Part shown: positions 24,083 through 60,108 of the stretch, in pieces
Layout: each line of letters begins with the position of its first letter
How positions within the stretch are numbered: position 1 is the stretch's first letter
Assembly (NCBI GenBank): GCA_964057225.1
Contig: OZ059896.1
Location: 16,182,001 to 16,246,000 of the forward strand
Source: Auanema rhodensis
Lineage: Eukaryota; Animalia; Nematoda
DNA length: 64,000 nucleotides
Direction of reading: 5' to 3'
Notes under the pieces: generated by a model
The model's database searches: none
What the model saw: the letters and a program-made list of their open reading frames with translations, nothing else
Told to the model about the DNA's origin: nothing
Program-made: the position numbers and the translations under genes

Positions 24083-24159
24083 CTTTCTTTCTCTCTCTCT
24101 CTCTCTCTTTTTCTCTTTCTCTTTTTCTTTCTCTCTCTCTTTTTCTCTTTCTCTCTCTC

Positions 24160-24213
<54 letters not shown>

Positions 24214-24234
24214 TCTCTCTCTCTCTCCCTCTCT
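24083..24234. repeat. Imperfect (CT)n / polypyrimidine microsatellite upstream of the SLC22 gene
   Basis: About 150 nt of CT dinucleotides and T runs. It explains the spurious SLSLSL and ERERER ORFs. Confidence 0.97.
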
Positions 24235-24799
24235 AGGTATCTCTCTTAGTGTGGTCCTATTTATTTCTAATTTCACATATAGTTGATTCCCTTCAAACAT
24301 CACAGTTTCTTTTTGTTATTATGTTATCCTACCATTTTCTGCTTTTCTTTTTTTTGTTGATAAACCGATATACATAGATACACGGTGATATAGTTTATTA
24401 TTTTTAAAATTTCAAATAGGTTTGGTTCAAACACAAACAGACAAAAAAAACCGACAGATATGGGTTATAAAACAATTTGTAAAAACTAGAATAAAGTATA
24501 TAATATAGTGACGATTGGATGAAATCCGTATGGGATGGGTATGGTCGACACACCAGGTACTGCGGCACCATCGTAGCCTCTCTATACTGCCTCCCTATGT
24601 CCGTTCTATTTATTTATGTTTTCCATTACTTAACAAGCGATTTCAATAGCTATTTATGATTTATAATAATATTAACACGTTTGTTGTACTTCTTAGTGTG
24701 TCGTATGGCATTCACTCATATATACATATATACTCATATCAACTCTTCTTACTTTTTCATTCTGTTTTTAGTTTCCTATTTTCCCTCTCTTTAGCTAGC

Positions 24800-28346: not shown

Positions 28347-28530
28347 ATCCCAAAAACAATTGTTTATATATATATATATATGCATAATTAACCAATAGTA
28401 ATATAAAATCTATAAATGCAATATTTAAAACCCAGTGAACATTCCTATATTCGCAGATCTCTTGATCTGTAAAAGGACCAATTATCAATAGTGGTCTCCT
28501 TATCCTTCTTACCTCCTACCACCTCTTATC

Positions 28531-28533
<3 letters not shown>

Positions 28534-28588
<55 letters not shown>
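28534..28588. repeat. (CT)n microsatellite downstream of the SLC22 stop
   Basis: Perfect TC dinucleotide run of ~55 nt. Confidence 0.97.
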
Positions 28589-28590
<2 letters not shown>

Positions 28591-29146
28591 TTTCTGCTTT
28601 TACTTTTATTTTTCAACTGAGTAGTAAAGGAAACGAAGAATATTATTTTTGTAAAATAGTGTCGGAATACATGTTTGAGCTTTTTTTTCGCTACAGCATT
28701 TGTTTTAAACTTTTTATTTTAGTTTTATATTTGGCATAGCTTGCTAATTATGGTGCATAGAATAGAAACGTGTGTTATCTTTTCTAAAAAAACTTAAATA
28801 AATTTTTATAGTTTTAATAAAATTAATTGAAATAATTTTAAATTCAATTTTATAATTAAATGTATTGTATTAGCTAATATACATACATATATATATAATA
28901 TAATACATTATACATTAAAAAAGAATATTCCATGAAAACAAGAAGAAAATGACAAGCAATAATTTTTTCTTTGTTAAATTGAATAAAAAAAAAGATTAAT
29001 TATATATAATAATAATAATAAAATTATTATTATTTTATCACACTTGAAATGTTTTTTGATTTGTGCCTTAACAAAGATGAGATTCTTTCTGTTCTTGTTA
29101 CCAAAATACTACTCTATTATACATATATTTATGATTTATTATTATC

Positions 29147-32100: not shown

Positions 32101-35100
32101 CAAGTTTTTTTAAAAAGTACTGGAACGGTTCCCTTAGTATATAAGGATGGGGTCAAGATTCTGAAAGCATGTCAACCATGGACGTCGACAACAAGATCAA
32201 GGTAAGCAGCTTAGCTCTCATCTTGATTCGACTCTTCTCCATTACAATATTTTTAACTATTTGATTATAGGCTTACCGCTTCATCGGCTATGCTGCCGTT
32301 ACCTTCTCCGCTGTTGCAGTACTTTCTGTCTGCATCTCTCTTCCAATGGTCTACAACTATGTAGCCCATATCCGCAGTCAAGTTCACTCCGAGCTCCGTG
32401 AGTGCAAATCTCACGTTAAGGTTTGTTATCTAATTTCTCGTTAATATCTCATTCTCTTATTATACTACAGGGAGTCTGGACATCTGTCTACTCAATGAAC
32501 GATGCCCCAGTTAACCGTACTGCTCGTAGCGCTTACAGAGGATACGGAGGATATGAAGGATACGGCTCTTATGACTCTGGAGTCAACTCCTACGAGGAGC
32601 AAGATCAATGCACAGGATGTTGCCTTCCAGGAGCTGATGGACCAGCAGGAGTCCCAGGACGCCCAGGAAAGCCAGGAAGACCAGGAGCCCCAGGAACCCC
32701 AGGAAACCCAGGACGCCCACTCCAGACTCCATGCGAACCAATCACCCCACCACCATGCCGTCCATGCCCAGCCGGACCACCAGGACCACCAGGACCACCA
32801 GGACCATCTGGAAACCCAGGACGTGACGGACACCCAGGAAACAAGGGACGTGATGGACACCCAGGAGAGCCAGGAAGCAACGGACATGCTGGACGCCCAG
32901 GAGCCCCAGGAAACCAAGGAGAAAACGGAGCTCCAGGAGTCCCAGGACACAATTCTCCACCACAACCAGGAACCCCTGGAAAGCCAGGAGCCCCAGGATC
33001 ACAAGGACCACAAGGACCAGCTGGAGCTCCAGGACAAGATGGACTTCCAGGAGCAAATGGAGAGAAGGGACCAGATGGACAGCCAGGAAAGCCAGGTCTC
33101 GACGGACAACCAGGAGAGCCAGGAACCCCAGGACAAGACGCCAGCTCTGGAGAAAAGGGTATCTGCCCCAAGTACTGTGCCATCGACGGAGGAATCTTCT
33201 TCGAGGACGGAACTCAACGCAAGTAGATCAACCTTTCCTTTATATGATTTGTCCAATAAAAAATTTGAAAATACAAATCTATATACATGCATTACACAAC
33301 AAGCTTTCTAGTATTTTTCTCAATTCCAAATGAATTATATTCTTACTCTTGGACTCTCAACATTAGCAGATCGATAACATGTACATCCTGTCGGACAAGT
33401 TGATCGGCATTTACACTTCTCATCCGGACAACATCTACAAGTACTAGGACAAAACTGAAAATATTTAAAATAGTAGAGAAAAATTCAATTGATCCAAATC
33501 TCTTCCAAAAATATTTATACTTCTTCAAAGATAATATTATAAAATTTAAAAAATAGAAAACTCACTTCTGCATATTTACACATTAATTGATTAGTTGAAT
33601 CCGCTATAGCTAGGGCAATTGTACGATTTGGTTCAATAATATGATTACAATTCAATTGATCCAAATCGGAAATTATTACAGAGGACTGAAATTTAATTTT
33701 AAAAATTAAGAAAACACATAAATCAACCCCATATATAACATTACATTCAATGCTCGATGCTAAGCTTGTTTCCACTTTTTTAAATTTGATCGTTGGCGCT
33801 TGAATATTTCTCTTTTCAGTTTTTTCTTTAAATTTCCATAATGGAATAAAAACTAAACACTAGTTATTTTCTTTATTTCTCTCCCTGTCTCTCGCCCTGT
33901 ACTCTAAAACCGTTCAATATGAAAAAGACATAACGGCCTAACTTGTGAAAGCATTACAATCGGATGTTCATATAGTGTGACCAAGACCTATTAGATAGCA
34001 CCATCAACGCCATCTTTTTCAGCTATGTATGAAATTTTTCAAATAAAGCAAAAAAAAGAAGATTTCATGGTAGAAACTGGCTAATTGCATCCGCCACAGT
34101 TCAGATTATGAGACTATTTGGTTTGGTTTCAGTCACTTACAGCTTCATTCAAATGTAAAAGCCATCGTATGTTGCAGTGACAATTTAGCTGATTATCAGC
34201 CAGAAAAATCCGAAGTTTTGTGGTTGATGCCCCAGATACAGTTGTTTCTTTGAGTTCATGTAGAAAATTATTTCTGAAATTGTAAAGAGGAAATCATTAG
34301 AATATCAAAAAATACATACTTAAGATCTAAAACACTTAATTTGCTAGCTTTTGTTATAGCCCCCTCTTGTATATAATTTATACGATTATGTGAAAGATCT
34401 ACGGAACGTAGTGAAACCGGAAGAACATTGACGGATCCTGTCGAGCTGATATGTTCTAGTTCATTTCCAGATAAATCTAATCGTCGCAAGTATCTAAAAT
34501 TGGAACTATTAATGTAGAAATTTTTTTAAAGTTTTATTTTTGAGTATAATCTATTTTCATCTAACTATTATATGTATATTTGATTTTTTTGAATTTAGCG
34601 CCAAATATGCAAACATTACTAGCGTATATGAGAGGCTATTGTCATTTTAATTTGGTTTGTGCACATGACCGGTTGGTTATTCATAATTTTGACAAATCTG
34701 AGACAGACACAGAAAGAGAGAAAGATAAAGAGATAGCTAGAGAGTATATGTTATCAACGTCATCATGATAATGGCATAGTTTATAAACAACAATTATTTT
34801 AACAGCTATTTCGGTCTTTATTTTTAAATGTTGTTGTTTTTCTAAATATATAACATTATCTTTTAGCATAGATAGTACATAATCTACAGTATATACTATA
34901 CACGTATGCTCGTTTCAATGTCTTTTTTATTTTTAAAATAATTTATATATATATATATATATGTAACTTGTACCTTGCACTGTTTGGAACATAATGTATA
35001 GTATTAATGGAATTATGACGCAATGACAAATCTGTCAATTCTTCCGGAAGTCTAAAATGAAGAGAAATCAAATAAGCTATTATAGAAAACATTTTCTAGC

Positions 35101-37199: not shown

Positions 37200-39817
37200 G
37201 GCTTTCTAGGCATTCTGAAAATAGATTTTCCAAATTTAGTCGTTTACTTATACAGGTTCTTCATTTTTAACTATTTTAAAAATGAAAGATATAATCAACA
37301 ATGATGAAAGGATGGGAGGGGTAGTGATTCAGAAGCAATCTGACGTCATGAAGCAATCATAACTATTGTAAAATATTCTTTTTTCAAATTTATATCAAAG
37401 AAACATAATTAAAAATCTCTAATTATGTATAAGAATATGTAAGAACAGAAACTTTTGTTATCAAGATAAAGAAAAATTGAAATAAGAACGGATATGTGAC
37501 TTCTTGGTGAGTTTAAGCTTACAAACAAACGGATTATGTCGGATTTGTGAAAAACGAGATATGGCACAGATTTAGTTTGGGGGTCATTGGCTGAGGCTTG
37601 ACAAATCAGGCATCGAAGGCGGTCCCTACGGGCAGGACACATAGCCAGTAACTACAAACATAGAAGGCAAAGTTAAAAGAAATTTCCATTCCTCCTCTCT
37701 CTCTCTCTATTTCCTTTCAAAATTGTACTCTCTTTCTCTCTCCTGCTCTTCATCTCTATAATGCCATCGAATGTTGTTTTATCGTCGCCGTTTTCTAGCT
37801 GTTTTGCTCTTCTTCATCTTCCATAAGATTCGTCTTACTTTTCTGCGATAAAGGCGAGCTGGAAGGCGCTTCAATGAGAAACTTAGAACCATTCCATATT
37901 AGACTGAGAGAGACATAGAGAAACATAGAATTTAAGAAAGCCTAGCGTTAGACAAAGGACATAACGATGGAATTAGATATATTCAGATGAACAGACTGAT
38001 AGAGGGTAGAAGAAGAATGAGTATGCTCAAAGTGTCACTACATCAAACATATTTTGATATGAAACAAAGTAAAAGCAAAGGTTATAAAAAGAATTTCAGG
38101 CCAAAAGATATGTATTTTACCAAATAGAATTAACAGATGTCATGACCGGAAATTCACCATTCAACCGGAAATGGAGTAAATATCATAGAATAGCGACCAA
38201 AAGATGAAGTTAATTCAACTTTTCATTCAATTAATTTAAAGTATCAGCCTCAGAATGTAATGAGCATGTCGGTTGTACAGTATATGAATATAGTGAAATG
38301 AATATTTGAAAACTCCCAATGTAATAATCTGTCGTGCGAATTCTGCTCCGAACTTTTAGAACGATTTTCTATAGTCACTTAGTGCTCTGTCCACCTATTA
38401 TTCCCATTATGGCCTTCTGATGTTTCTTACATGTGAATTGAAATGATTCTCACAATTTCCGGATACTTTTTCCTCTCCCCTCTTGCAACTTTTCCCCATC
38501 TTTCTTCCTCATCATTCAATTGGATGGTATTTTGATGATTTTAATTTCTCTCATTTTTAACTGAGAAAAAAAATTCCGTGTATACAATAAAAATAAAATA
38601 ATAAATATCAAGAATGTAACTAGATCTTGATAAGACAAAAATGTGGAGAAAAAACGAATCAATAGCAGCAGATGTTCATACTGTACATCAAAATTTTCAT
38701 TTCCACTGTCGTTTTCTGTTGACCCAGCTCCTTCGTTTCATTGTATATTTTCTCAGTTCTACCCTTTTTTAGCCTGGCTACCCCAACATACGGACACTTA
38801 TATCATTGAAGACGGAAAGCAATTTTTAACGCAAAATAAGAAGAACTACTAGCATGCGTGCATATACAACGATATTGAAGCAACTGTTTTAATCTTCAAA
38901 ATTGCACTTTTTTCTTCGCTACAAAACGAAAGTAATCGATTTTTTTGAAAAATCAAGGTTACATTTGTTTGCCATATCAGTTAACCCCCCACGTCCCGTA
39001 GCCTCTTTTCGTTTTCCTTGGCCTTGTTGTATTTTCATTGCGAACGTTCTATGTTCTTAAGTTCATGCTTAATGCTGGTCATCTGAGCCAATGGGTTCAA
39101 ACTTTTTTTATTAAAAAAAAACGAAAATAATAAGGAGAAAAACGAATTATTTTATCATGGATCATAACACTTCATTCCAAACATTTTAATTGATTACCTA
39201 TACCGAAAAAAAACTTACTCAAGTTGCGGTCTTCGAAAATTAATTGATAACATTGTCTCCTCGAAAATCTTGATGACAATACCGAAGAAAACTGTCTGAC
39301 TTGGTAAATAATATTGAAAAAAAGGGTGCTACATCATATAATCATTTCAAATAGGATTTTCTGTCATTCTGCTGCTTTCCTCCCTCCCTATTAATTAAGT
39401 TCTAGTAGCTTCGCTTATTTTATTTCAAAACCTAAAAAGCTACTATTTTTCTAAGCGGCTTCAAGTATTTCACGATCATATAATTAGCAGTAACGAAGCC
39501 TTAATCAATGATCTCTGAATTAAACGGTACACTATTCTTGACAATTTGTTTAATTTGTTCTAATCAGGTTCTTATCACTTTGAGAATAAAATAGTGGAGT
39601 AATAGTGAATCTGTTTAATTAAAACAACAATTTTTTAAATTGGCATATAATAAACACACAATTTACGCCAACTTGTCTGTTATTGGCGCAAAGGATGTTA
39701 TCCTTGTTTTCATTTTACGTAGCGTATAGCTTGCGATCAGTTGTTAGCTGGATTAGGCATATTTATGATATTTGAACAGATTCATACATAATTAAACACT
39801 TTTCTTTCAGATTTAAA

Positions 39818-40263
39818 ATGGATTCTTCACAAGCGCATAGGATAGCTCAACATCAAGGTAGACCAAGTCTACGATTAGACATGCTTATAGAGAAAAGGAA
39901 GCCCGGCGCTGTATGTTATTTTTTTTATAGTCTCTTAGTTTTATATATATATTTTTTTTTTATAGTGTTTGCCTGTTAGAACATTAAATTCGCGTGGTAG
40001 ATTAAGAACGGCGTCAGGTTAGCTAATTTACATAATGCTTTGTATTTATTTATTTTTTGTTTTCTGTTATCCTTTTTACCTCTTTAATTTTTCGTTGATC
40101 AATTGTTTTCAAAGTGCCTGTTTATATCTTTCAATCAAAGTTTATAGAATCGGCAGCTTCCAATGGTTCGCCATATTTGTATGACCAGGAAATAAAAATG
40201 ACTGGAAACACTTTAGTTCATATGCCCCCTCAACCTAGAGTAACAGGATCTGTTTCTAATACG
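39818..40263 (+). CDS. hlh-30: Candidate far-upstream alternative N-terminal exons of hlh-30 (39818-39910, 39966-40017, 40148-40263; 87 aa)
   Basis: TTTCAG acceptor, then AAAATG. Three exons have canonical donors (GTATGT, GTTAGC, GTTAGT), TATAG acceptors and mutually consistent phases (0, 1, 0) with no stop. The last donor is phase-compatible with the hlh-30 exon at 44390. Confidence 0.6.
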
Positions 40264-41614
40264 GTTAGTTATTTTTTATTCATGTTATTTTTTGGATTGT
40301 TTGTTTTCAATATTTTATGGAAGTTATGTGAATATCATTTACCAATGCGCTTCGGTTTCGCTGACATATTTATATAATCTTTAAATTATTTCTCTGGATT
40401 TCTGCTTGATTCCATTATGTTTGTGTGTCTATTTCGATCAGACAACGCGCAATTTGTTTAAATGTGTACCATATTAATTTTATTTTAAACATTGTTAATG
40501 CTCGCTAAATTCATTTGTTATAAATTGCTTTCCAAATGCCTCTCCCCTACCTTTAAAATATTGAATGAAAAAAATTTGCCCTTTATAATAAGTATCATTT
40601 TTTCCTTATTTGAACGTATCGAGCTCATTACAAATAGCGTTTGTTGTCGTATAACTTACACCTTATTGAGTTTTTTAATCTATTTTTTCTTATATTTAGT
40701 CTCTGATAGCCATATTCTATTACCCATTCTTTTCTTTCTAAAGGATTTATCAACTACTTCTTTGTTATCTACAATCTTTTCCTATCGGGTCATGATCTTT
40801 TGAAAATAGTTTACCATCGATGTAATGACCACGTTGTGCATATATTAGATATTAACTGTCTGCGAATTCTTTGTTTTGATATGATTGGTGCAATGTTCTG
40901 ATTATGATATACAGCATTTGCTTCTAAAAATAGTATATATGATCAACTTTATTAAACTAGAAATATCTATTTCTGTTCAATATTAATGCGAAGATTTTTC
41001 CTACGTAAGAATATCATATTAATAGATTATCATATTCAAATTAATTCTGCCATATCCAATTCCTATATGATATCTCATTCAATATTTCAAAAAGTTTCAG
41101 GAATGCATGCGAACTAGAATAGAAATAAGTTTCCTGATGAATTTATGTTCCTCGCAGTTTTCATTTCAAATGTAACTTTTTGAATCAGGCATTCGTGTCC
41201 TTGAGGAGAAAGGCGCAGAGTATGCGATTTCTCCCTTTCATAGCATTGTGCGGTAAAGAAACACACAAACAACTGATGAGTCTGAAGGGGTTGGTGGTGT
41301 TGGCGGGGGCTGGCGGCAACAGACAACTGCAGGCCGGAGGCAGTACGTTTTATACATAGACGCAGGCTTGCCATCTGAAAAGAGAGTGTATTGAAAAAGA
41401 TGAGATGAAAGACACCGTGGTGGGAGGTGGTTGAGCATCACGTCATCGAATTGGCCGCCAGCCAACACGTGGAGCAGGCCCCGCCCAGGACCGGCTCTAG
41501 TTCATTCTCGTGTCATTTCGCTGCCCAAGAGCTTGACCGACTCAAGCTATTCGCGATTTTTGAGACAACTTTTTTTTGCGTTTTTTGATGTTAGGCGCTT
41601 CTTCTAATACGCCC

Positions 41615-41671
41615 ATGTCCATGTGGGCAATGAATGGAAATTATAATAACTACAACTACAATGTTTCTGAT
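41615..41671 (+). CDS. hlh-30: Candidate alternative first exon of hlh-30 (MSMWAMNGNYNNYNYNVSD)
   Basis: ATG 20 nt after a T-rich ...GTTAG acceptor; 19 codons; perfect GTAAGT phase-0 donor; GC-rich promoter-like island just upstream. Confidence 0.55.
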
Positions 41672-42850
41672 GTAAGTTTTTTCTTCGTTTGGTTTATCTC
41701 ACTTGTTGGTTAATCGATTGGGTATTCACCGTTGAACATTTTTTTCTTTTCATTATGTCTTTTTCAAGCCATAATGGGCTTTGATTCTTTTCATTTTAAA
41801 AGCACAGGGTTTCAAACCCTGATGATTATTTTCGAAACCAATGAGATTGGAATAAATTAACGAATTTTCAGTTTCTTTAAACAAACAAAGTTTCTACATA
41901 TATGAACTTTTCTCACAAATTTTTCTTCAAATTACGAATAAAACGCTGCCTATATGTGGCGGGTTTCATTTTTATCTCAGAATTTTAACTAGTCAGCTCT
42001 CAAATTACGCCAATTTTCAAAAGCGGTTGACGTTAATGATATAAGAGCGCAATTTTTGCAATATAATTCGCTTTATGAGAGTTGCGATAAATTTTCGAAA
42101 AATTCTACATCTGCTTCCATCATTTAAACATTCAATATCAGGGTCCGTTGGTGCAAATGGCCAGCTGATCTCAATTTTTTTATTTTTCTATTCTTATTCT
42201 TTGGTGTATGCGTGTGTGTGGGGATAGCTTCGAACACCAGCATCTAGATTTCTCGTGGAAGCATGAGATAAACTTTCATCCTTACGATGGATATCAGATG
42301 AATTCGTCTAATTCTTTGCTGGAGTGAAATGATCATTCTCATGCGTGGTAGGCATGTGGAAAACTTTGCCAAGCAAGTATGCTAGTAATAAAGCTCTTGG
42401 TCTAGTTTCGTATTGCCTTAATTATTTCTGGCCATAGTTTCCGCTGATATTCTGAAAAAGCTGCCCTCTTTCCGTTTTCTGCCTTTTTCTCCTCATTTCC
42501 CAATCTCTCAATCTCCTTTCAGCCTTCTCCTGCCTCGAATCCGCATCATCTCATGTAATCGATATGTGTAGAGGATTATTTTTTGTCTGAGAAGAAAAGA
42601 GAGAAAACGAAGAGAAGATCGACGGCCGAGCGTTTACTGCGGGTAAAAGACAGTCTTTGGCTTTGCCATCTAATGTCCTTGGTAAGCGAGAGACACGATT
42701 GATAAGGTTGTGCGATAAGGATGATAGGGGACCGGGAGCGGCTGGCGACGCGCGGCCAATGCAATAGAAACATGGAGAAAAGAAGAGAATGAGAGAAAGC
42801 GCGCTCTCGCTGTTGCTGATGGTTGTGTACCGTGTGTCGTAGTCTCGACT

Positions 42851-42852
<2 letters not shown>

Positions 42853-42917
<65 letters not shown>

Positions 42918-42930
42918 TTCTCTCTCTCTC
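42853..42930. repeat. (CT)n microsatellite upstream of the main hlh-30 first exon
   Basis: TC dinucleotide run ~160-240 nt before the ATG at 43092. Confidence 0.97.
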
Positions 42931-43091
42931 TCCTTTTCTCTTTCTACCTCTCACTGATTTCGCTCCACTCCGTGTCGTCCCTTTTCTCTACTTGTGTCTT
43001 TTCATTCTTACCCCATCAAATCTTCTGCTTTGATTGCCCACCGTTGCGTACCCGCCTTGTCTTAACCTATCTGACTCAGCATTTATTTGAT

Positions 43092-46000
43092 ATGATTCGT
43101 GGATTGGCTACTCATTCGCCAATGAGTTCACAATACTATGACGATGAACCGTATGAATCTAACGCTGCTAGGTTCCGGAGCACATATAATGCGGTCTGTT
43201 TTTTAACATACTGTATAAGTCTTTCTTTTCAAATTCCCACACATAGCTTTAGAAGCTTTCTCTCCTTCTTATCTTCGCTTAACAGCCTAAAGCATTGATT
43301 TTCATGTGAGAGCTTCTAAATTATTCAGAACCTAGGGCTGATTTAGGCAACAGTTCGTCTATTTGTTAATCGATTTTGTCGCGCTCTATTCTGCCGTTTT
43401 CTGATTTTTAGGTTATAATCATTGCTATTTTGGACATGCATGAATTTCTTTCTTTTCGTCGCGGTTTCAATGATTTTGCCTTTTCGACATTACGTCATCA
43501 CCGAAAACGATGGCGATATTGTATCATCATTTCCATCGCTTGATATCAGGGATTGACCGAATAATATCAGGTCAATCATAGTTTCGATAATGGCTCCTAT
43601 TTCATCGTATCCAATCTAATCTTAAATTAGATAACATTGGAAGTAGCTGAAATGTCTGAAAGGACAAAAAAAGTACATTCGCCGTTTATTGATGGACGGA
43701 CACTGAGTGTGCCTATGCTGCTGACTTACCCCCAATTCCCATTCAGAACCAATGTACGAGAATAATCAGAGGGCACATTTCTTATTTCTTTTTTTGTCCA
43801 AATGTCGAAAAGTTTCGAAATTAGCGAACTGTTAATGTATCAATTGGTAATTTTGAATTGATACCCTTTTCGCTTATTTACATTCGCATGAAATTGATTT
43901 CTTTTTCTCGGTTTTTGATGCTCATCTAATAGTAGGCTGTCGTGTGATGATAGTACATGAATAGTCACAGCTAGATGAGGCATATTTTACAAATTTAAAA
44001 GAACTTGCGTTGTTACTAAGGAATGTATGTAATATTAAGGCGAAACGTTAAAAAAGCTGAAGAGGAAGAGGTTAAAAAATCATTTGATAGTTTTACAAGT
44101 TTTTTTTTACAACTCACTATCAAAAAGCGCTTCATAATTCTACTCGCGTCAGACATTAGGCTTGATGTTTGCACTAGCTTTACTCATATGCTTGAAGAAG
44201 CTTCTCTTGGCATTTTCTCTCTCCCTTCCCTTCTATCTTTCTCATACTTGCATTTGGTTTCCTCTACATCATACCTCTTCGCGATTATTTAATAATTCGA
44301 GAAAGCGAAAAACTTTCAATCAGGGAATGACTCGCAAAAACTAATCTATAGCCAAAGGCTTGAATTGTTTATACTCTATATGATTACAGATGGAAAGGAG
44401 AGAAACGGGAACTTTGATACCACAATCTCAACGACTCTCACAAAATCTACAATTTGGAAGTGCTCCTTCCCAAAGTGGATTTGCTGCTATGTCATCTCCT
44501 CGTAAAATGCAACATCCGTTTCAGGTTAGTTAGAAGTTTTTCATTTCTATGTGTCGTCATCAACTTTCTCATAGAGTTTGGTTTGCATAAATTATAATTT
44601 TCTTTGACATTATTAGCAGGCACAGCTGAGAAATTATTATATGAAATAAGTTTTACTAGGGTAATATGAGATAGGTTTTTCTTTCTCGGGAAAAAAAAAC
44701 GTTTATTTCGCGGGTGGCTCTTACTTTTAGCTCTCTGCAAATATTAACTGTATGAGAGGGACATTTTCACTTGCTTCCTCCCGGAGACGTTTAATACTAA
44801 CTGCTCTTCTATTTTCTTTTCCTGCTTATTCTTTCTTTCTGTGCTAGCAAGTAGTCCAAGAAAACGTGATGACAGCAAAAGCGATCCTTCTACCCACTAA
44901 GCATTCAACTCGGTCCAACTGTCAGCTGATGGACTAGCGATAAAATGAAACTTGTTTACCTGGCTTGTTGCCAGGAGATCCAAAAGAAGTTCAGTGTTGA
45001 TGATTCCGTGAGAAAAAACTGAAACATGTCTTATCGATTTTGAAACTCTTCTCTTGTTCTATTGACGTTATAACGTATATAATATATTAGAACATAGAAC
45101 AAAGACTATATGATTACATTCAGTTTCTCCCTCTTTGTTTAAAGATAGGAAAAGATACATATGGGATTTTCAATCAAGCAAGGCAAGTGTTTAGTAATTC
45201 AGTAATGAACATGAGAAAAAGGATCTTCCCAGCTTTTTTCTTGAAATAGTAGCCAACATAATTTTAGCGCAGATGGCTAGCGCATTATCGACTCAAATTA
45301 TCAAAAAAAATCCAATAAAAAATGTTTGTTCAAATATCTCTTCTATTATTTCATATTATTCCTGTTTTCTTTATTAATATATGGGAGAGAGAGAATAATG
45401 AATAACTGATAAGCATTAATAATATTAAGAGAAAGATTTTTTCGAAAGAAAACGCGGAGACAAAATCAAAGGCGACATAGATAATTGAAACTTTTCACGA
45501 GAAAAACGGCAGCTGCGTTTTTTCATCTCTGATATTTCCCTCAATGTGAGTCCTAACTTTTATGTGCTTCTTTATCATTATCGACTCGTGAGTTGGGAAG
45601 ACAAAAAAAGAGATGAAGATGTTTAATTGTTTTCTGTGTGGTTTTCATAGTAAATCGGGACATAGAAGTGAACTTTGTCTCGGCAATTAATCAAAGGCGG
45701 TTGTGCGGGACAGCTGTAGAGAAGCTGCTAGTTGTCTAACTGATCCCTCCAGTTTTATGAAACTTCTTGAGCAAACTAATATTGAGAGGGGTCGAAAAGT
45801 CGTCTGCGCTGTTGATTCACGGTTGTCTATTGTCTCCGGCATTTAAATTTTCCGGCAGACAGGCAGTATATCCATTTATCCATACTGTCGCTTTGTTGTC
45901 TTTTGCCTCTTAACCTTAATTATACTGGATTGGCCATAATTAGCTACATCAACCATGCCAGCTACTGTTTCAAAGCCTCTTTCAAATGCTTGTTTAATGG

Positions 46001-49000: not shown

Positions 49001-52000
49001 GATGATTGTATAAATGTGTTTGTGTCTGATGAAAAGATACTCTGTTTCTCTTGTTCTCTCTGTTCATTATTGAACGTTCTGGCTTAATTTGTTGCCCCTT
49101 CATTGATGTTTAGGTCGGGCTGGTCGCAATCAGCTGTTGGTTAGAAGGGGGCCTGACTGACTAACCGCGGGTTGCTGTATGTTGTTTCTCTCTCTATCTC
49201 TCCCTCTCTTGTTTCTTCTCGCTCTCTTTCAGTCTTTTCCCTCGTTCTTCTCTTAGCTCTGATTCTCTCTCTGTCTATATCTATCGTTCACCTCTTTTTT
49301 CTCTCTTTCTTTCTTTTTCTCTCTATCTTTTCACTTCTCTGTTTCTGTGCGTGAATAGGCAAGTAAGCTGGGCAGGAGATGTGATGGGGTATGGCTGGCT
49401 TGGCCACAAGCGGGCGGGGCCCTGTCGATGTTCGTCGTGCCCTCCCATCGCACTCTCAAACAACATCCAGCTCTTCGCTGCCGACATATACCTCCCTTTT
49501 TGGTAATTTATGTATGTTCTCTCCGTGCAATTGGATAATTTACCAGGCGGTTCTTAGAACTAGTTCATTTGTACAAAATACATAAATTGGTAGTAACATC
49601 CTCAGTCATTATATACTGACGACGGCCCAGACCCATATTGGGCCACCACTTCCACTACCACCATCACAATCATCGCCATCACAACCATCACAACCATCAA
49701 CGCCAACCACCCAGTTATAGTAGTGTCATCTATGCTGGCTGTTGTGGCGTTGCTTTCGCTTTCTCAATCGTTTTATGTTCTACAATCTCTGTCTTTATAG
49801 CTTCTGGAAGCTAGACATGTTTCTTGGTTTTGTTATGATTTCTCAAGCGGATTTCCAAAGACGACGTCTTTGTAAGGCCAATGAATTTCTAATTTCTCGG
49901 TCCCAGATTGCCATTGTTCTGAACGAGCTGTTTTGCTTCATTTGCTTTAGCTGTCCTCAGTCCTACTCAAGCTCTTCAACTTTAAAGCGTTTTGTTTTCT
50001 AATATTACTCTCTCACTTTCTTCCCTCGTCTGGTTGATGAAGCCTAATCGATGTAGCTCCTCCTCTAGTCTTCCTGATTTTATACTTTAGTGGATTTTGC
50101 CGTATTCTTCTTTATCAACTGCAACTATTGCAGTTACCATCATCCATGATTCTTTTCAGCTTTTCTAATCTATTATGCACTAATATGGTAAACATGAATT
50201 TCAACTTGCCGGTTTTCTTGTACTTTCCATCCATTTTGACGCTTTTCACTGCTTGAAAGTTATTATATCCCTCCATTTCACCTTATGTAGATGACGATGA
50301 AGAAAGGCTGGGAAGAGCGATTGAAAAGTAAGCTAGCCGGGTCTATATAGTTTGTTGTTTGTTGCTTCAGCATCATTTCATTCGATCTATTGATTCATCG
50401 TCTACTTCTCGTTCTTCTTCTTTTTTGGCTTTTTATTCATCTGACGCTTCAATTTAACGCCTTCTATCCATATCTGTTATGCTCGTCGTTTAGTATATAT
50501 TTGCACTTCTCTCTTGGATGTTATAGAAGATGTATGTTTGTGCGAAGAGCAGAATGCTTTCTTACGCGGGTGCTCACCAGCACCCACCACGACTGAAACA
50601 GCCTTTTCTTTTCTCTCTGTCTAACTGTTCTGAGAACGATCTGGAGAGCAATACACAACAGTATAGATACAAGTTTGTGAGTAGACGTTTTGTCTAGACT
50701 CACAGCTATGAACTGCCGAACCTTTTACCATCCTTCCTCCTCTTTGCACAGAGTATCGACTATCAAAATATTTTCTTCTCCAATTTTCATCCCATCAGTC
50801 ACTGTTTTTCCCAAAAAGAATCAGGCTTCTCCTGGTTTGTTTTGTTGTGAAATTTGGCCTTTATTGACTCTACGAATGTGTGTATGTGTGACTACGTCTG
50901 TAGTTCATCATCTCACAGTCTCACTCTTATAGGTTATCGATTCGTGCGATTTTTGTGCTCATTTACCTGTCACTGATTCCACTTTAACTACCGTCTAGTC
51001 CGTCAATCGTCTGAGCATTTCAATTTCTCCTTTGCTTTTAGCATTGCATAAACACAACTCTTCCTGTCATTATGTTCTTCCTCAGGCAGTGAGAGAGCTT
51101 GCCTCATCTTCACCTTCCTGTCATTTTTGCAGCCGCTGTTTCTTCTGCTACATCAACAAGCCCTTTTGAGACTATAATCATCTTTCTGCTTTTCTTCGCC
51201 AGAATATTCATGTCTTTTACCTGATCCTATTACTATTTATACTCACGAATGAACGCCATACTGGTATCATCATCTCTGACTTGGTTACACTCCACTAGTT
51301 TCTTCGCTCTTCCTCTACCGGTTCCCAATCATCATTTCACGCCATAACGATCATCACAAAACATTTGTGGTACTGCTGGATGAGGCGGCCAGTTTGACTC
51401 CTTTTTTTAATTTCCTTTTATAGACTTAGCTCTTCTATTTTTCTTGTCAATCAAACTTATTTTTTCTATTGCTTCACCATATTGTTTAGGCATTTTGTTG
51501 CATTTTTCTTCTTCGAATATTCGTTGTCGTTATCTTCATCGTTACACACATCTTCTTTTTTCTTTTTTTCTCCTATATTTATGGTCATATCTTGCAGCAG
51601 TTGCTCTCTATTCGGTGCTTGTAAATATCTCTTCCTAATACGGGTTCGCTATAACACGACGATGACCGTTGATGTGGTGGCGCGGGAAACACCCACCCGC
51701 AGAATTCTTCCTTCTCGAAGACGATTGATATCAGCTCCTTCTGCTCGATATTCGCCCACTGAAGAGCGGAAAGTCAGTCGACGAGTAGTGAAGACACCGT
51801 CTCCTCCAATGGCCAAAACTCTAGTCGTGCGCAAAACGACCCCAAAACGAACTGTTGTAGTGGTCCAGGTAATAGACTATTCTACATTTACTTCTAGATT
51901 AGTCGTAATAAAATGTAGTTAATGGGGTAGTATTATAAAGGTTGCTAGATATTCGAAAGTTAATCGAAATATATAAATATAAAAGAAATATGTATCCATA

Positions 52001-55000
52001 GGTTGTTTGATGTATGTGAGTGAATTAAAGTACATTTTGCTATAAATAACATAGAAAGTTATAGAAAGAGAGTGAAGGAAAGAAAGAGAAAGAGAGACAG
52101 AAAGGTAGAGTTAGAAAGAGCTATGTCCGATCAACGTAATGCTCAAAGAAGTGAAAAACGATAGACGATCAGAGAGAGTGCGGAAACGAGAAATGAAAAC
52201 CTAAAGGGAAAGTTGAAGCTTAGTTTAGAGCTTGAAACTGCCCTTTTTTCTTTCTTTTTCATTCTCTCTTGCTCTATCTCTATCATACACCATCTCAGCT
52301 GTGCCTACATCCTACTTTGACTCTTATTCCTAAAGCAGAGTTTGTAGCGAAAAGAAGCTTAAACCGGAAATATTAAAAGAAGGGAAGTACATATGCTCTT
52401 TTCAGAACCAACGACAATCTCCTTCCATGGACAGCCCAGACTTACGGTTTGGTGATTCTCCACGAAGTGGCTCTTACAATCAAGAGGTTTGCATATTTGC
52501 CTTTTTTCTCTTAATTTTATGTTTTATTTCTATTACTTCTTTTGTTCAATATTTCCATGATTTATATGTATTTTTTCTAAGTCTCTCGTATGTTATATTA
52601 GTGTAATTATTGTGACCAGACCTTCCAAGAACATACTTTTGGCTTCCCGCCGAGAGACTATGTACTAGAGAATGGTAGGAATTGAGGGGAATTGATCTCA
52701 TCTTATTCACCTTTTTTCTATTCTCCTCTTCCATATATATATATATATTTATATATAATCATCAACTGGATTTATCTAATGTTCATTCAATCCGGGGGTA
52801 TAATGCATTCATGTAGCTAGTTAAAGAGAATATTTTTTTGTTATCTACCTGCTGGCTTTCGATATTATGTTATTCGGAAAGGGGCGAAAGAGAACTTTTC
52901 TGTTTTCTACATCGTTAAGATAACACAAATGGAAGTGGAAAGTTTGTTTTCTTTTGCAAAACTCCTCTTTACTAGCTCAATGCTACTTTCTTCAACTTGC
53001 CGCTCAATCGCCAAACTTACCCGACCAAAATATACAAACGAACGAAAACTAAACAATTGCAGCTTCGGCTTTGACACTACTTTGGACAAATTAGGGATCA
53101 GAGCGATTTGTGGGATAAATAGTCGTTCTTTTTGAGTTTTTTTTATCTGAAATCCTGCTCATGAATTTCTAGAAAAGAACATATTATGAGTGTTATGGTT
53201 TAGACCCAGAAATCTAACATGTTCATTGGAGACAAAGACTACAAGTCCAGTTGTACCATCTGACAGCATCCTAGCCTTCTAGGAAATGCAACGATGGAAA
53301 GAAAAATTGATGAAAAACCAGAGAGAGCGGCAGAGCGATATGGGGGAAAAAGAGAAAAGGAAAGAGACGAGGCTCGTTCTACGTCCGAACGATATTATCT
53401 TTCTCCTGCCAGTTATTGGGCTGTCTGTCTCTCTTTTCTGGATGCTCTCCTCGTCATTTCGCCTTCGTTTTGGGCCCCATCAGTCGTCGGCCATCCAAAG
53501 ATTCTTACCATTATGAAAGAAGAAAAGGGACTAGTTTCGACACTGCAACTCATTGGTATTGACGCATACTAGTAGGGTTGCCATGACAATGAAACCTATG
53601 GAACATTAACGACTTTGTTTTCCTTATCTCCCGCTACCTCTCTCACACACTCAGTCAATCTCTCTATCAATCAGCCAGCAGATATTCATAGTTATTAAAC
53701 AACACGAGTTGGCGAAAGCTAATTCTAGTTTGAATGTATTATAGAAAATCAACTTTTTTGTATATTTATTAATGACCTAAGCGATTTATATGTTATTTTG
53801 TGAATTTTCTGTGCCTTTCGTAGTTGACTTGTCTCTCACACATCTCGACCAATGATCAGATGCCCTTAGCATGTAGTTCGGTTGGAACTACTTATACGAA
53901 GATCGTGAGATGGAGAGCTGTTGAGGTCCCAACCCATAGAGCATCATGAGAAAGAGCATGAAGTTCTAAGAGAAGAAGAATGCCCGGATTGTAGAATTGC
54001 AATTTCTTTATCTTGATTAGATCGTTTCGTCTTATTAGAAGCTGTAACTACTATCCATCGATCATTGCCCTCAATGTCGCTGTTGAGCTTGATGTCTCAC
54101 ACTACTAGTAACAGGGTCATTATTTCTTGAGCTTTTTATCTTGTCTCTCTTTTTTTCTCGAATTTCAAACATTTTGCGGTAGCAAATCAGCAGCAAACGC
54201 TTGAAAACATATTATTGTGAATGAATATACACATACACACATATCCACACAAACGCATTGTTCCCACCATTTTGTTGTTCGTTGTAGTAGTCTTTTCAGT
54301 CAAAAAGAATAGTTTATTCGTTTTCTACATCTTTTAATCAAATGCAGCTCTATACAGTAGTGAGCAGGAGCATCAACTACATAATCATCACTTTTATCAA
54401 CATGCTATTTTTTCTATAACAAGCTTAACAAAGGATTTTTACTCTGTGAAAACCCCATTTTGCTTACTTTCGCATTTATGCTCCTCTGCCCTTTGGACTC
54501 TTTTCTGCACGAAAAGCTCACAAGCCCTAAGAAGGAAGCAAGCAAATACTAGAAAAATTGATCGAAGGCCAAGTATGAGTTGTTTACGAGCCCTTTGTTC
54601 AGACTCACCATCTCTTCTAAAGTCTTATACCCTAGTTTTTGCAATTTTGTGTTTGTATGTTTGTGGTTCTCGATTTATGGCTTTCTACATGAAGGCAGTA
54701 TGATTAAGAGGCGATTAAGTTGATGAAAAGTGATTTCTCCTTTTGTTGGCAAGCATATTCGTGCTTCCAATCTAATTCCTTGGTTTATATTTCTTTTTTT
54801 TCTTCATCGAGAATTTTTTGTTTTTTGTCGTTTCATCTTACTGATGTTTCTGCTTCGGTTTCTGTTCTGATAATCCTATCCTCTTATATATTGGTAAATG
54901 GGAAAGAGATTAACTGCTAAATTGCTTATATTTCATCATTTTCTTTCGTTATCTGTTTGTTTCATATCCTGTGCTTGTTTATGGAAGCATGGGGAACTTG

Positions 55001-58000: not shown

Positions 58001-60108
58001 CAAATGATCAGTTCAATAATCTGATTGAATTGTCAACTGAAAATATTGCCTGAGCGCAAAGCATAAACCTGTCCTCTTTGTGCAGCTTGAACATTCACTC
58101 GAACGATCGGTCTGGGTCCCATATCCAATCTCGTTTGCATTTCAACCGTTACATACATCCCATTCAAGCTTTTGTGCTTCTTATTTAACGAAATTTGTTG
58201 TCTGTCCTATTCTATGTTCATATATATTCTTGTAAACGGATGTACGTTTGTGCTCTGTGTTTGTTGGCGTGTGTTTGGGTGTGTGTGTGTGTTTGATATT
58301 CCGAATTTAATACTTTCCTTACGTATATTTATTTTGAAATCTTTTCAGATCTCTGTCAGTTACTCATGTGCCGATAATTTAACTCAGCTCGGAGGCTCGA
58401 ATGCTAGACCAATTCCTGGAGCTCAATCAGGTATGTTTTTCTCAACTTTCGAGCTCCATAGGCTCTTTGTGTCGTTTTCTTCATCATAGTAGCAAATGTT
58501 TTTCTTACTGCCCTCGGACTTTGAAGATATCGATTTGTTTTTATGTTTCGTATCAGCTATAAGCTTGACGTTACTTAAACAAACCCATACTCTGTTCGTG
58601 CTTATCACAGCTTTTTCATTTTGAAATATCATCATCTTTTACCTTCCAATTGTGTCTATGAAATCGAGACAAAATGAAAAACATCATAGAAAGTATTTAA
58701 TTCTCATTATTAAGGTGGCTCAGGTCATTCCGGTAGTCCAATAGCCATCGGAGGAGCTGCGGCTTTCCGACAAGTAGTTAGCAGTTCAGCTCCCACCTCT
58801 TCTATGGATATGGATCAAATGATGCTTGCTGCGCAAGATAGTGATAGCGACTATTATCGTGATCGTCGGAAGAAAGACATTCACAATATGAGTAAGTTTT
58901 CGGCTTTACAACTTGATAGTAAACTTGAATTGTTTCAGTTGAAAGACGACGTCGTTATAACATAAATGATCGTATCAAAGAATTGGGACTTATGCTGCCT
59001 AAAGGAAGCTCAGAGTACGTTATAATCAAGCAACTTTTATATATTTGGTTTTATGCTACAGAATGTTGCTCATATTATCCATTTTCAGAGAAATGAAATT
59101 GAATAAAGGAACTATTCTCAAAGCCTCATGTGATTATATTCGCCAGCTTCAACGTGAAAGAGAGAACATGGCCACATTCCAGCAACACACCATTTCTGTA
59201 GAGAATATGGCAAAACAATATGCTGATCGTGTACGAGTATGTCTATTGAAAGCCTGAGAACAAGTAATCAGTTCATTCACCTTTAGGAACTCGAGGATGT
59301 TTTGACACAACAAGGCATTCAAGTTCCACCGGCCCAACTTCCCCCATTACCTAAATTAGCTGAACGTCCTATTAAACAAGAACCTGATGACAGTTCTCCA
59401 AACCAAACACCATGTGGATCTTTGGTCAGTTTTGATTTTTCTTTTCGCGGAATGTTTAAGATTTAATTCTAAACTATCCTTTCCTGTGTTTAAACCTATG
59501 CTTGTGGCCGGCGTTCTGTCGGTAACATAGTCTGCCTAATATTTCCCTTTGTGTTTTTATCACAACATGACCCTCATTTCGTGTGCTTTTAGTCATCGTC
59601 CGGCTTTTTGGCTCAACTTTCCGATGGCACTGCCGCCATGCAAATTGCCAGCCCAGCCTGTCGTGGAGGACCAATGCCTGTATCAAAATCTCAAGCTGAT
59701 AACTTCTTCAACAACAGCAGCCCTTCGGAATATGGTTCGAATCTTGCTCTATTTATCAATCCACTCACTAACTCATAACCACAATTCTGCGAAAAAACCT
59801 AATTCGATGTTTAATACTCATTTCTTCCCTTTCAGCTTCGAACAATTGGCAACAATTTAATGAACTAATCATGGACGACATCGCTCCCCATCCAGTAAGT
59901 GTCTAATAGTTGGCATCATCGATTAATCTGTGACTGCGTTTAGAACAATCCACTTTTCTCTGGGGGTGATCCACTTATTTCACAAGCTGGAGCCCATCCA
60001 TCTCCACACCTTGGCAGCAGCCAGATGAGTCCCGATATTCAATGGGATCAAGCCGGCTTCTCACCTGACGGTCCCAATGGTATGCAACATCAACAGATGG
60101 ACTACTAA
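43092..60108 (+). CDS. hlh-30: MiT/TFE bHLH-ZIP transcription factor HLH-30 (TFEB/MITF orthologue)
   Basis: Exons 43092-43193 (MIRG...[15 protein letters not shown]), 44390-44524 (MERRETG...SSPRKMQ), 52406-52486, 55338-55415 (acidic [12 protein letters not shown]), 58349-58430 and 58715-58891 (VVSSSAPTS). Then b[34 protein letters not shown]...[26 protein letters not shown] motif, and ...QQMDY* at 60108. Confidence 0.96.
51662..51868 (+). CDS. hlh-30: Candidate internal alternative first exon of hlh-30 (69 aa, basic)
   Basis: GC-rich coding-like island [37 protein letters not shown]...KRTVVVVQ ending CAG|GTAATA in phase 0, compatible with the acceptor at 52406. Confidence 0.7.

What the first reader, a model, noticed from the sequence alone, without database searches (positions are those of the whole stretch)
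39805..40269. Far-upstream hlh-30 exons carry a TFEB-like Rag-binding motif and an Akt-type site
Seen: three phase-consistent exons encode MDSSQAHRIAQHQGRPSLRLDMLIEKRKPGACLPVRTLNSRGRLRTASESAASNGSPYLYDQEIKM...VSNT, spliceable to 44390. Known: TFEB's N-terminal SRIGLRMQLMREQ (MITF exon 1B SRILLRQQLMREQ) binds Rag GTPases and is isoform-specific in MITF. Inference: GRPSLRLDMLIEK matches R-x-x-L-R-h-x-h-h-x-E, and RLRTAS fits RxRxxS. The other three candidate N-termini lack the motif, so promoter choice could switch lysosomal Rag/mTORC1 control on or off, as with MITF-A versus MITF-M. Caveats: the match is short, the important Gln is Asp here, and splicing to TTTCAG at 41100 would instead give a stand-alone ~111-aa protein.
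Basis: partly seen in the sequence, partly recalled or inferred. Interest (0 to 1): 0.7.

Follow-up and report, generated by a model that had tools for sequence, protein, structure and literature searches.

The report
Rag-helix-like alternative N-terminus of nematode TFEB
Three small far-upstream exons of the TFEB/MITF-type gene hlh-30 (in an Auanema worm, not C. elegans) are truly spliced into the mRNA. They encode a diverged nematode version of the N-terminal region that in mammals docks TFEB on Rag GTPases; only one of four alternative N-termini has it, and the C. elegans gene seems to lack it.

Summary
Exons 39818-39910, 39966-40017 and 40148-40263 are in phase, have GT..AG borders and join to 44390 in spliced contigs of four runs (one study). 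No contig uses the acceptor at 41100. An in-frame TGA in a 5'UTR exon makes ATG 39818 the start.

The window is an Auanema species, not C. elegans. The sister species Auanema sp. JU1783 already has this isoform annotated, as an unnamed product.

Between the two species the exons differ by 28 synonymous and 12 non-synonymous changes. None of the non-synonymous changes falls in the three motif cores.

The same colinear motifs occur in Necator, two transcript-derived proteins and, in part, Mesorhabditis. Clade I nematodes keep a near-canonical MiT/TFE helix (SRTxLRLQLMREQ) followed by GNRLVHLPPQ.

- Clade V versus clade I profiles: E 2e-9.
- Clade I versus non-nematode MiT/TFE: E 9e-5.
- Exon 1 compared directly with TFEB/MITF: not significant. 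Pfam and PDB searches were blank.

RxRxxSES is conserved in clade V. The C. elegans and C. sp. 36 loci have no such exons.

Homology and isoform specificity are likely; Rag binding and the kinase are untested.

The parts
39500..39526 (+). 3' end of a 5'UTR exon, which begins upstream of 39500. It is spliced to 39811 and holds an in-frame TGA at 39516-18.
   Evidence: Joint 39526>39811 in runs X3 and X4; sequence read.
39811..39910 (+). Exon A1. The CDS starts at ATG 39818 and runs 31 codons.
   Evidence: Colinear with residues 1-31 of P0139.
39860..39895 (+). Helix-1-like motif RPSLRLDMLIEK (residues 15-26), aligned to TFEB R4-Q15.
   Evidence: MAFFT alignments. R15 is invariant in all 12 nematode rows. 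0 non-synonymous against 8 synonymous changes in codons 12-30 compared with Auanema sp. JU1783.
39966..40017 (+). Exon A2 (52 nt).
   Evidence: 6 synonymous and 0 non-synonymous changes.
39999..40016 (+). RLRTAS, a basophilic RxRxxS site. It continues as ...SESA across the A2/A3 junction.
   Evidence: RxRxxSES is conserved in P0139, Necator P0025, P0023, P0027 and Mesorhabditis P0096/P0107/P0108.
40148..40263 (+). Exon A3 (116 nt), ending in phase 0.
   Evidence: Joints 40017>40148 and 40263>44390 in all four runs.
40183..40233 (+). Second motif, DQEIKMTGNTLVHMPPQ. Nematode consensus is GNxLVHxPPQ.
   Evidence: Best hit in the window to an HMM built only from clade I/III sequences (iE 0.0026) and to the nematode N-terminal HMM (1.4e-10). 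H and P are invariant.
44390..44524 (+). Common second coding exon, which receives first exons A, B and C.
   Evidence: Three different joints into 44390. 97.8% identical to Auanema sp. JU1783.
41588..41671 (+). CDS of alternative first exon B (MLGASS...). No Rag-like motif.
   Evidence: Joint 41671>44390 in all four runs. Matches the N-terminus of P0033.
43092..43193 (+). CDS of alternative first exon C (MIRGL...YYDDEPY...). This is the type used by C. elegans isoforms b/c.
   Evidence: Joint 43193>44390 in X1 and X2. Homology to the N-termini of P0132 and P0002.
51662..51868 (+). CDS of alternative first exon D, holding ...RRRLISAP... (the C. elegans isoform a type). It joins 52406 and so bypasses 44390.
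   Evidence: By homology only. Not covered by the reads call.
52406..52486 (+). Next common exon, following 44524.
   Evidence: The loose end of the contigs after 44524 maps to 52406.
58715..59236 (+). Exons holding the S201-type serine cluster and the bHLH-zipper.
   Evidence: PDB hits to TFE3, MITF and TFEB at E 3e-7 to 1e-4. tblastn of P0139.

Best explanation
The three exons are the coding start of one of at least four alternative-first-exon isoforms of the Auanema hlh-30 (TFEB/MITF-family) gene. Their 87 residues are the diverged rhabditid version of the ancestral MiT/TFE N-terminal regulatory region. They hold three conserved elements:
- a short helix-1-like element, RPxLRLDxxxEK, which keeps the RagC-contacting Arg/Leu/Arg of TFEB;
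- a conserved basophilic phospho-site, RxRxxSES;
- a second conserved element, FDQEIxxxGNxLVHxPPQ.

Shown here: transcription and splicing, the start codon, purifying selection on the three cores, conservation in other nematodes, and isoform specificity.

Inferred: this N-terminus lets isoform A dock on active RagA/RagC at the lysosome for TORC1 phosphorylation. Isoforms B, C and D would escape that route, as MITF-M does relative to MITF-A. An AGC-type kinase acting on RxRxxS may modulate the docking.
For: Splicing and start codon: with sequence.

Same isoform annotated in a sister species: P0139.

Selection: exons are 79-87% identical at nucleotide level against 44-64% for introns. There are 28 synonymous and 12 non-synonymous changes, with none of the non-synonymous ones in the three cores.

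Conservation: Necator, P0023, P0027, Mesorhabditis, Parascaris, Trichuris, Trichinella and Romanomermis.

Profile comparisons: clade V versus clade I, probability 96%, E 2.2e-9 over 75 columns, with helix aligned to helix. Clade I versus non-nematode MiT/TFE, E 8.6e-5 over the Rag helix. The Trichuris N-terminus matches positions 1-18 of Pfam PF15951 (E 0.53).

TFEB contact residues R4, L7, R8 and L11 (PMC9931586) map to R15, L18, R19 and M22.

The motif occurs only once in the window, and isoforms B, C and D lack it.
Against: Exon 1 has no significant similarity to TFEB/MITF on its own. Pfam and PDB are blank at E<=10. hhalign of clade V against non-nematode sequences gives E 0.89. A canonical-motif HMM ranks the exon-1 piece about 1000th of 3369. 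Permutation P in any register is 0.37.

TFEB S3 and Q10, needed for Rag binding (PMC3575543), are G and D here. R13 and Q15 are I and K.

The would-be helix is at most about 13 residues between Pro16 and Pro29/Gly30, against 40 in TFEB. The AF2 monomer model shows no secondary structure (pLDDT 60).

The equivalence of the second motif to TFEB helix 2 is positional only.

The RNA evidence is assembled contigs from a single study.
Confidence: 0.5

Rival explanations
1. The N-terminus descends from the MiT/TFE N-terminal region but no longer binds Rag GTPases in rhabditids. The conserved RPxLRLD, RxRxxSES and GNxLVHxPPQ elements would serve another partner, for example a kinase/14-3-3 switch, a degron, or an export or import signal.
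For: Residues shown by mutagenesis to be essential in TFEB (S3, Q10) are replaced. L11 varies within clade V as A, S or M (listing). The helix is truncated by Pro/Gly. A new conserved phospho-site has appeared that clade I lacks. Caenorhabditis seems to do without these exons although HLH-30 still responds to TORC1.
Against: The three residues that form the salt bridges and the first hydrophobic contact with RagC (R4, L7, R8) are the best conserved positions of helix 1 across all nematodes. Purifying selection on the core is strict.
Confidence: 0.3
2. Only the second motif and the phospho-site are a real, nematode-specific conserved module. The resemblance of exon 1 to the Rag helix is chance among Arg/Leu/Glu/Lys-rich sequence.
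For: A blind search with canonical-motif HMMs does not find exon 1. Versus non-nematode sequences, P in any register is 0.37. Pfam and PDB are blank.
Against: Exon 1 is at the same N-terminal position and at the same distance upstream of motif 2 as the canonical helix of clade I. hhalign aligns helix to helix within a 75-column match. R15 is invariant.
Confidence: 0.15
3. The exons are transcriptional noise or a non-productive upstream start with no protein function.
For: The RNA evidence is contigs from one study, and depth cannot be ranked.
Against: There are 28 synonymous against 12 non-synonymous changes, with none of the non-synonymous ones in the motif cores. Exons are far better conserved than introns. 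The same N-terminus occurs in distant nematodes and is annotated in a sister species.
Confidence: 0.03

Closest known systems
Human TFEB N-terminal docking region (residues 2-105; helix 1 clamped by RagC-GDP; PDB 7UX2/7UXC/7UXH)
   Same: It lies at the N-terminus of a MiT/TFE bHLH-zipper factor. R-x-x-L-R-h is in the register of R4, L7, R8 and M9, with E14 identical and L11 replaced by M. A second conserved element follows about 50 residues downstream.
   Different: There is no significant direct sequence match. S3, Q10, R13 and Q15 are not kept. The helix can be at most about 13 residues rather than 40. The whole region is 87 rather than about 108 residues. It has an extra RxRxxSES site. Binding is untested.
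MITF-A (exon 1B1b, binds Rags) versus MITF-M (does not)
   Same: Alternative first exons decide whether the Rag-helix-type N-terminus is present. Here isoform A has it and B, C and D do not.
   Different: The module is split over three small exons 4.1 kb upstream of the common exon. The tissue specificity of the promoters is unknown.
C. elegans HLH-30 (W02C12.3, isoforms a-j)
   Same: It is the orthologous gene. It shares first-exon types C (isoforms b/c, MIRQLNSPGG...FYDDEPY) and D (isoform a, ...RRRLVSAP...), the S201 region and the bHLH-zipper.
   Different: No annotated C. elegans isoform has the A-type N-terminus. No A-type exon was found in the locus with 10 kb on each side.
Clade I nematode HLH-30/TFE3-like proteins (Trichuris, Trichinella, Romanomermis)
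   Same: The same two-motif N-terminus in the same order. hhalign gives E 2.2e-9.
   Different: Clade I keeps the near-canonical helix (M-x-SRTxLRLQLMREQ) at the very N-terminus and lacks RxRxxSES.

Membership tests
MiT/TFE bHLH-zipper transcription factors (HLH-30 orthologue) | bHLH-zipper most similar to TFE3/MITF/TFEB | tested here: met
   The exon at 59090-59236 hits TFE3, MITF and TFEB chains at E 3e-7 to 1e-4 and Pfam HLH.
MiT/TFE bHLH-zipper transcription factors (HLH-30 orthologue) | Orthology to nematode HLH-30 | tested here: met
   The window's exons are colinear with Auanema sp. JU1783 P0139. P0139 clusters with HLH-30 of Haemonchus, Necator and C. elegans.
MiT/TFE N-terminal region (Pfam PF15951 MITF_TFEB_C_3_N) | Match to the family profile at its gathering score | tested here: not met
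   No hit at E<=10 for exons 1 or 3, or for the clade V N-termini. Trichuris reaches only E 0.53. Fish and mollusc controls score 8e-39 and 3e-20.
MiT/TFE N-terminal region (Pfam PF15951 MITF_TFEB_C_3_N) | Homology traceable through intermediate sequences | tested here: met
   Clade V versus clade I, E 2.2e-9. Clade I versus non-nematode MiT/TFE, E 8.6e-5. The direct comparison fails.
Rag-binding helix of TFEB/MITF-A/TFE3 | RagC contact residues Arg4, Leu7, Arg8, Leu11 | tested here: met
   R15, L18 and R19 are identical and M22 is conservative, in the MAFFT register.
Rag-binding helix of TFEB/MITF-A/TFE3 | Ser3/Arg4 and Gln10/Leu11, required by mutagenesis | tested here: not met
   The equivalents are G14/R15 and D21/M22. 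Only Arg is kept, and Leu is replaced by Met.
Rag-binding helix of TFEB/MITF-A/TFE3 | Long N-terminal helix within a docking domain of about 105 residues | tested here: inconclusive
   The AF2 monomer model shows no secondary structure (pLDDT 60). Pro16 and Pro29/Gly30 bound a possible 13-residue helix.
Rag-binding helix of TFEB/MITF-A/TFE3 | Binding to active RagA/B-GTP with RagC/D-GDP | not testable with these tools
   No multimer prediction or assay was available.
Rag-binding helix of TFEB/MITF-A/TFE3 | Isoform-specific presence through alternative first exons (MITF-like) | tested here: met
   Three first exons join 44390 and only A has the motif.
Basophilic AGC-kinase site (Akt/SGK/S6K type, RxRxxS/T) | Consensus present and conserved | tested here: met
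   RLRTAS in the window. RxRxxSES in P0139, P0025, P0023, P0027 and Mesorhabditis. The chance of RxRxx[ST] in a single sequence is 16%.
Basophilic AGC-kinase site (Akt/SGK/S6K type, RxRxxS/T) | Phosphorylation by Akt | not testable with these tools
   Glu at +1 is not the hydrophobic residue preferred by Akt (own knowledge). The kinase is unknown.

The most novel reading that the evidence does not exclude
Nematodes kept the ancestral Rag-docking N-terminus of MiT/TFE factors only on an alternative-promoter isoform of hlh-30. In Rhabditina it was remodelled to RPxLRLD plus an AGC-kinase site that gates docking. The Caenorhabditis lineage lost it altogether, so direct Rag recruitment of HLH-30 would be switchable by promoter choice in Auanema and strongylid parasites and absent in the C. 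elegans model.
Probability: 0.3. Interest if true: 0.7.

Novelty: new member of a known kind. Interest (0 to 1): 0.55.

Why it matters
HLH-30 is the standard worm model for TFEB. How TORC1 and Rag signalling reach it is usually inferred from mammals.

If the Rag-docking N-terminus exists in nematodes only on one promoter-specific isoform, and is missing from C. elegans, two things follow. First, conclusions about Rag-dependent control drawn from C. elegans HLH-30 would not transfer directly to other nematodes, parasites included. Second, Auanema or strongylids would offer a natural on/off system, like MITF-A versus MITF-M, for testing what Rag docking adds.

It also shows that Pfam-level annotation misses this domain in all nematodes.

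Tried and rejected
- Pfam scan of each exon, including the MITF/TFEB N-terminal profile: no hit.
- phmmer of exon 1 against all PDB chains, including full-length TFEB: no hit at E<=10.
- hhalign of clade V N-termini directly against non-nematode MiT/TFE: nothing.
- HMMs of the canonical helix (clade I, non-nematode, or both) searched against all six-frame pieces of the window: exon 1 is not recovered, at rank about 1000.
- Region-restricted word searches. P0139:1-87 came back blank because P0139 is only a cluster member and only representatives are indexed. P0025:36-135 found only Necator, P0023 and a mis-fused Ancylostoma model. Rarity in these searches therefore says little.
- AF2 monomer of the N-terminus with a 12-row alignment: disordered and uninformative.
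- The assumption that the window is C. elegans: rejected. The S201-region peptide differs from the C. elegans peptide, and exon 44390-44524 is 97.8% identical to Auanema sp. JU1783.
- A 'HLPPQS' word in C. elegans intron 1: surrounded by stop codons, so chance.
- Literature searches for a described Rag-binding region or A-type isoform of HLH-30: none found in the papers held.
Full report
**What is in the sequence**

Reading the window gives three small exons with GT..AG borders:
- E1: 39811-39910, with the ATG at 39818 (31 codons, phase 0).
- E2: 39966-40017 (52 nt).
- E3: 40148-40263 (116 nt), ending in phase 0.

The next in-phase acceptor with an ATG-initial exon is 44390-44524. Further downstream lie the other exons of a MiT/TFE-type gene. 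Its bHLH-zipper exon hits TFE3, MITF and TFEB chains of the PDB.

**Transcription and splicing**

Four public runs of one study hold about 36-40% of the sampled words of 39790-40290, which is the share expected for the exons alone. Their contigs were laid on 39500-45400.
- Joints 40017>40148 and 40263>44390 occur in all four runs.
- The E1>E2 joint follows from the record coordinates; the tool skipped a short repeat there.
- A 5'UTR exon ending at 39526 joins 39811 in two runs.
- That UTR exon has an in-frame TGA at 39516-18, so ATG 39818 starts the reading frame.
- First exons ending at 41671 (all runs) and 43193 (two runs) join the same acceptor, 44390.
- No contig uses the TTTCAG at 41100.

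The contigs are spliced and so derive from RNA. They come from a single study, and depth cannot be ranked.

**Whose gene it is**

The window is not C. elegans.
- Its S201-region peptide differs from the published C. elegans HLH-30a peptide.
- In the representative search the best hits were only 78-79% identical.
- Exon 44390-44524 is 97.8% identical to a protein of Auanema sp. JU1783.

That species has two annotated products. P0033 uses first exon B. P0139 (515 aa, an 'unnamed protein product') begins with the A-type N-terminus. All exons of P0139 map colinearly onto the window. The isoform is therefore already annotated in a sister species, but without any domain call.

**Selection**

I aligned the window to the JU1783 locus L003. 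The three exons are 79-87% identical at nucleotide level; the introns are 44-64%. There are 28 synonymous and 12 non-synonymous differences. None of the non-synonymous ones falls in the three cores:
- E1 codons 12-30.
- All of E2.
- E3 codons 12-33.

The exons are coding, and these cores are constrained.

**Relatives**

A word search with the Haemonchus orthologue gave 374 nematode and other MiT/TFE proteins. Local BLAST of the separate exon peptides against them, and inspection of the N-termini, showed the same three elements in the same order in several species:
- Necator P0025: RPNLRLDAMLEK, then RNRTTSES, then GNKLVHLPPQ, followed by the MERRE exon.
- Transcript-derived P0027: all three elements.
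- Transcript-derived P0023: the RxRxxSES site and the second motif only, not the helix-1 element.
- Mesorhabditis paralogues: part of the set.

Clade I nematodes (Trichuris, Trichinella, Romanomermis and one transcript-derived protein) begin with a near-canonical MiT/TFE helix (M-x-SRTxLRLQLMREQ). About 60-80 residues later they carry GNRLVHLPPQ. In the nematode alignment A5, Arg15 (equivalent to TFEB Arg4), His72 and Pro75 are invariant.

**How strong the homology is**

- Clade V N-termini (with the window's exons as separate rows) versus clade I: probability 96%, E 2.2e-9, 75 columns, helix on helix.
- Clade I versus non-nematode MiT/TFE: E 8.6e-5 over 21 columns, which are the Rag helix.
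- The Trichuris N-terminus touches positions 1-18 of Pfam PF15951 at E 0.53.
- An HMM of the second motif built from clades I and III alone finds exon 3 as the best of 3369 six-frame pieces (iE 0.0026).

Exon 1 by itself is weak evidence:
- Pfam and PDB are blank.
- Clade V versus non-nematode profiles give nothing.
- A canonical-helix HMM does not recover it.

|---|---|---|
| Clade V versus clade I | 0.0004 | 0.01 |
| Clade V versus non-nematode sequences | 0.014 | 0.37 |

. The link to TFEB therefore rests on the clade I bridge and on colinearity, not on the 13-residue match.

**Mapping to function**

In the TFEB-Rag structure, Arg4 and Arg8 form salt bridges with RagC Asp290. Leu7 and Leu11 pack on RagC, and Arg13 and Gln15 make further contacts (PMC9931586). 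Here these positions are R15, R19, L18, M22, I24 and K26. S3A/R4A and Q10A/L11A abolish Rag binding in TFEB (PMC3575543); here those positions are G, R, D and M. So the main electrostatic and first hydrophobic contacts are kept, and others are not. The possible helix is short, bounded by Pro16 and Pro29/Gly30. An AF2 monomer model is disordered, which neither supports nor refutes a segment that folds on binding.

RLRTAS fits RxRxxS. In a single sequence that is a 16% chance event, but RxRxxSES is conserved throughout the clade V examples and absent in clade I. The kinase is unknown.

**Isoform specificity**

The window encodes four alternative N-termini:
- A: the finding.
- B: 41588-41671.
- C: 43092-43193, the type of C. 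elegans isoforms b/c.
- D: 51662-51868, the type of C. elegans isoform a, assigned by homology.

The helix-1 pattern and the second motif occur only in A.

**C. elegans**

None of the ten annotated C. elegans isoforms retrieved has the A-type motifs. I searched several loci by tblastn, regular expressions and the A5 HMM:
- the C. elegans locus with 10 kb on each side (L001);
- the C. sp. 36 locus (L004);
- with less reach, Diploscapter (L005) and C. auriculariae (L006).

None gave a hit, while both Auanema loci gave clear hits. Loss in Caenorhabditis is the likely reading. Extreme divergence, or an exon further upstream, is not excluded.

**Literature**

The papers held describe C. elegans hlh-30 alternative promoters (PMC3685541, PMC8354637) and TORC1/Rag genetics. 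I found no description of a Rag-binding region or of this N-terminus in HLH-30.

- Exons were used by reference one at a time, and the stored sister-species protein P0139 stood in for the joined form.
- The two region-restricted word searches were nearly blank because only cluster representatives are indexed. The apparent rarity of the A-type N-terminus in databases is therefore not evidence of absence.

**Verdict**

These are real, constrained coding exons of a promoter-specific isoform. They encode the diverged nematode counterpart of the MiT/TFE N-terminal Rag-docking region, together with a conserved basophilic phospho-site. Rag binding itself is a reasonable but untested inference, at about even odds.

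Noticed in passing
window 51662-51868: Alternative first exon D encodes ...RRRLISAP... This combines RxRxxS with a 14-3-3 mode-I-like RxxSxP. It is conserved from C. elegans isoform a (RRRLVSAP) to strongylids, ascarids, Panagrellus and Bursaphelenchus N-termini, so a second, different regulatory N-terminus may exist.
   Followed up: partly
L001 (C. elegans chrIV hlh-30 with 10 kb each side), L004 (C. sp. 36): No A-type exon (helix-1 or GNxLVHxPPQ) was detectable by HMM, tblastn or regular expression. This suggests loss of this N-terminus in Caenorhabditis.
   Followed up: partly
window 39731-39810: One contig (run X1) runs unspliced from 39731 into exon A1, while two runs splice from a UTR exon ending at 39526. 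This could be a second start site just upstream of the acceptor, or unspliced precursor. SL1 use at 39811 was not assessable from contigs.
   Followed up: no
window 42670-42954, 24076-24303, 28491-28600: Long (GA)n/(CT)n microsatellites read as RERE/SLSL 'ORFs'. One lies between first exons B and C of hlh-30.
   Followed up: no
P0140 (Ancylostoma duodenale 'BED zinc finger', 575 aa): This protein contains a stretch 79% identical to part of the Necator A-type N-terminus. It is probably a gene-model fusion that hides the hlh-30 upstream exons in that annotation.
   Followed up: no
window 32423-33226 and about 29-34 kb; L003 584-3622: A cuticle collagen ORF and an LRR protein gene lie upstream of hlh-30. 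The LRR neighbour is syntenic in Auanema sp. JU1783.
   Followed up: no
P0096, P0107, P0108 (Mesorhabditis belari): Several divergent hlh-30 paralogues keep RPCLRLN and RNRTISES but have a degenerate second motif and altered basic regions. This points to a lineage-specific expansion of the gene.
   Followed up: no
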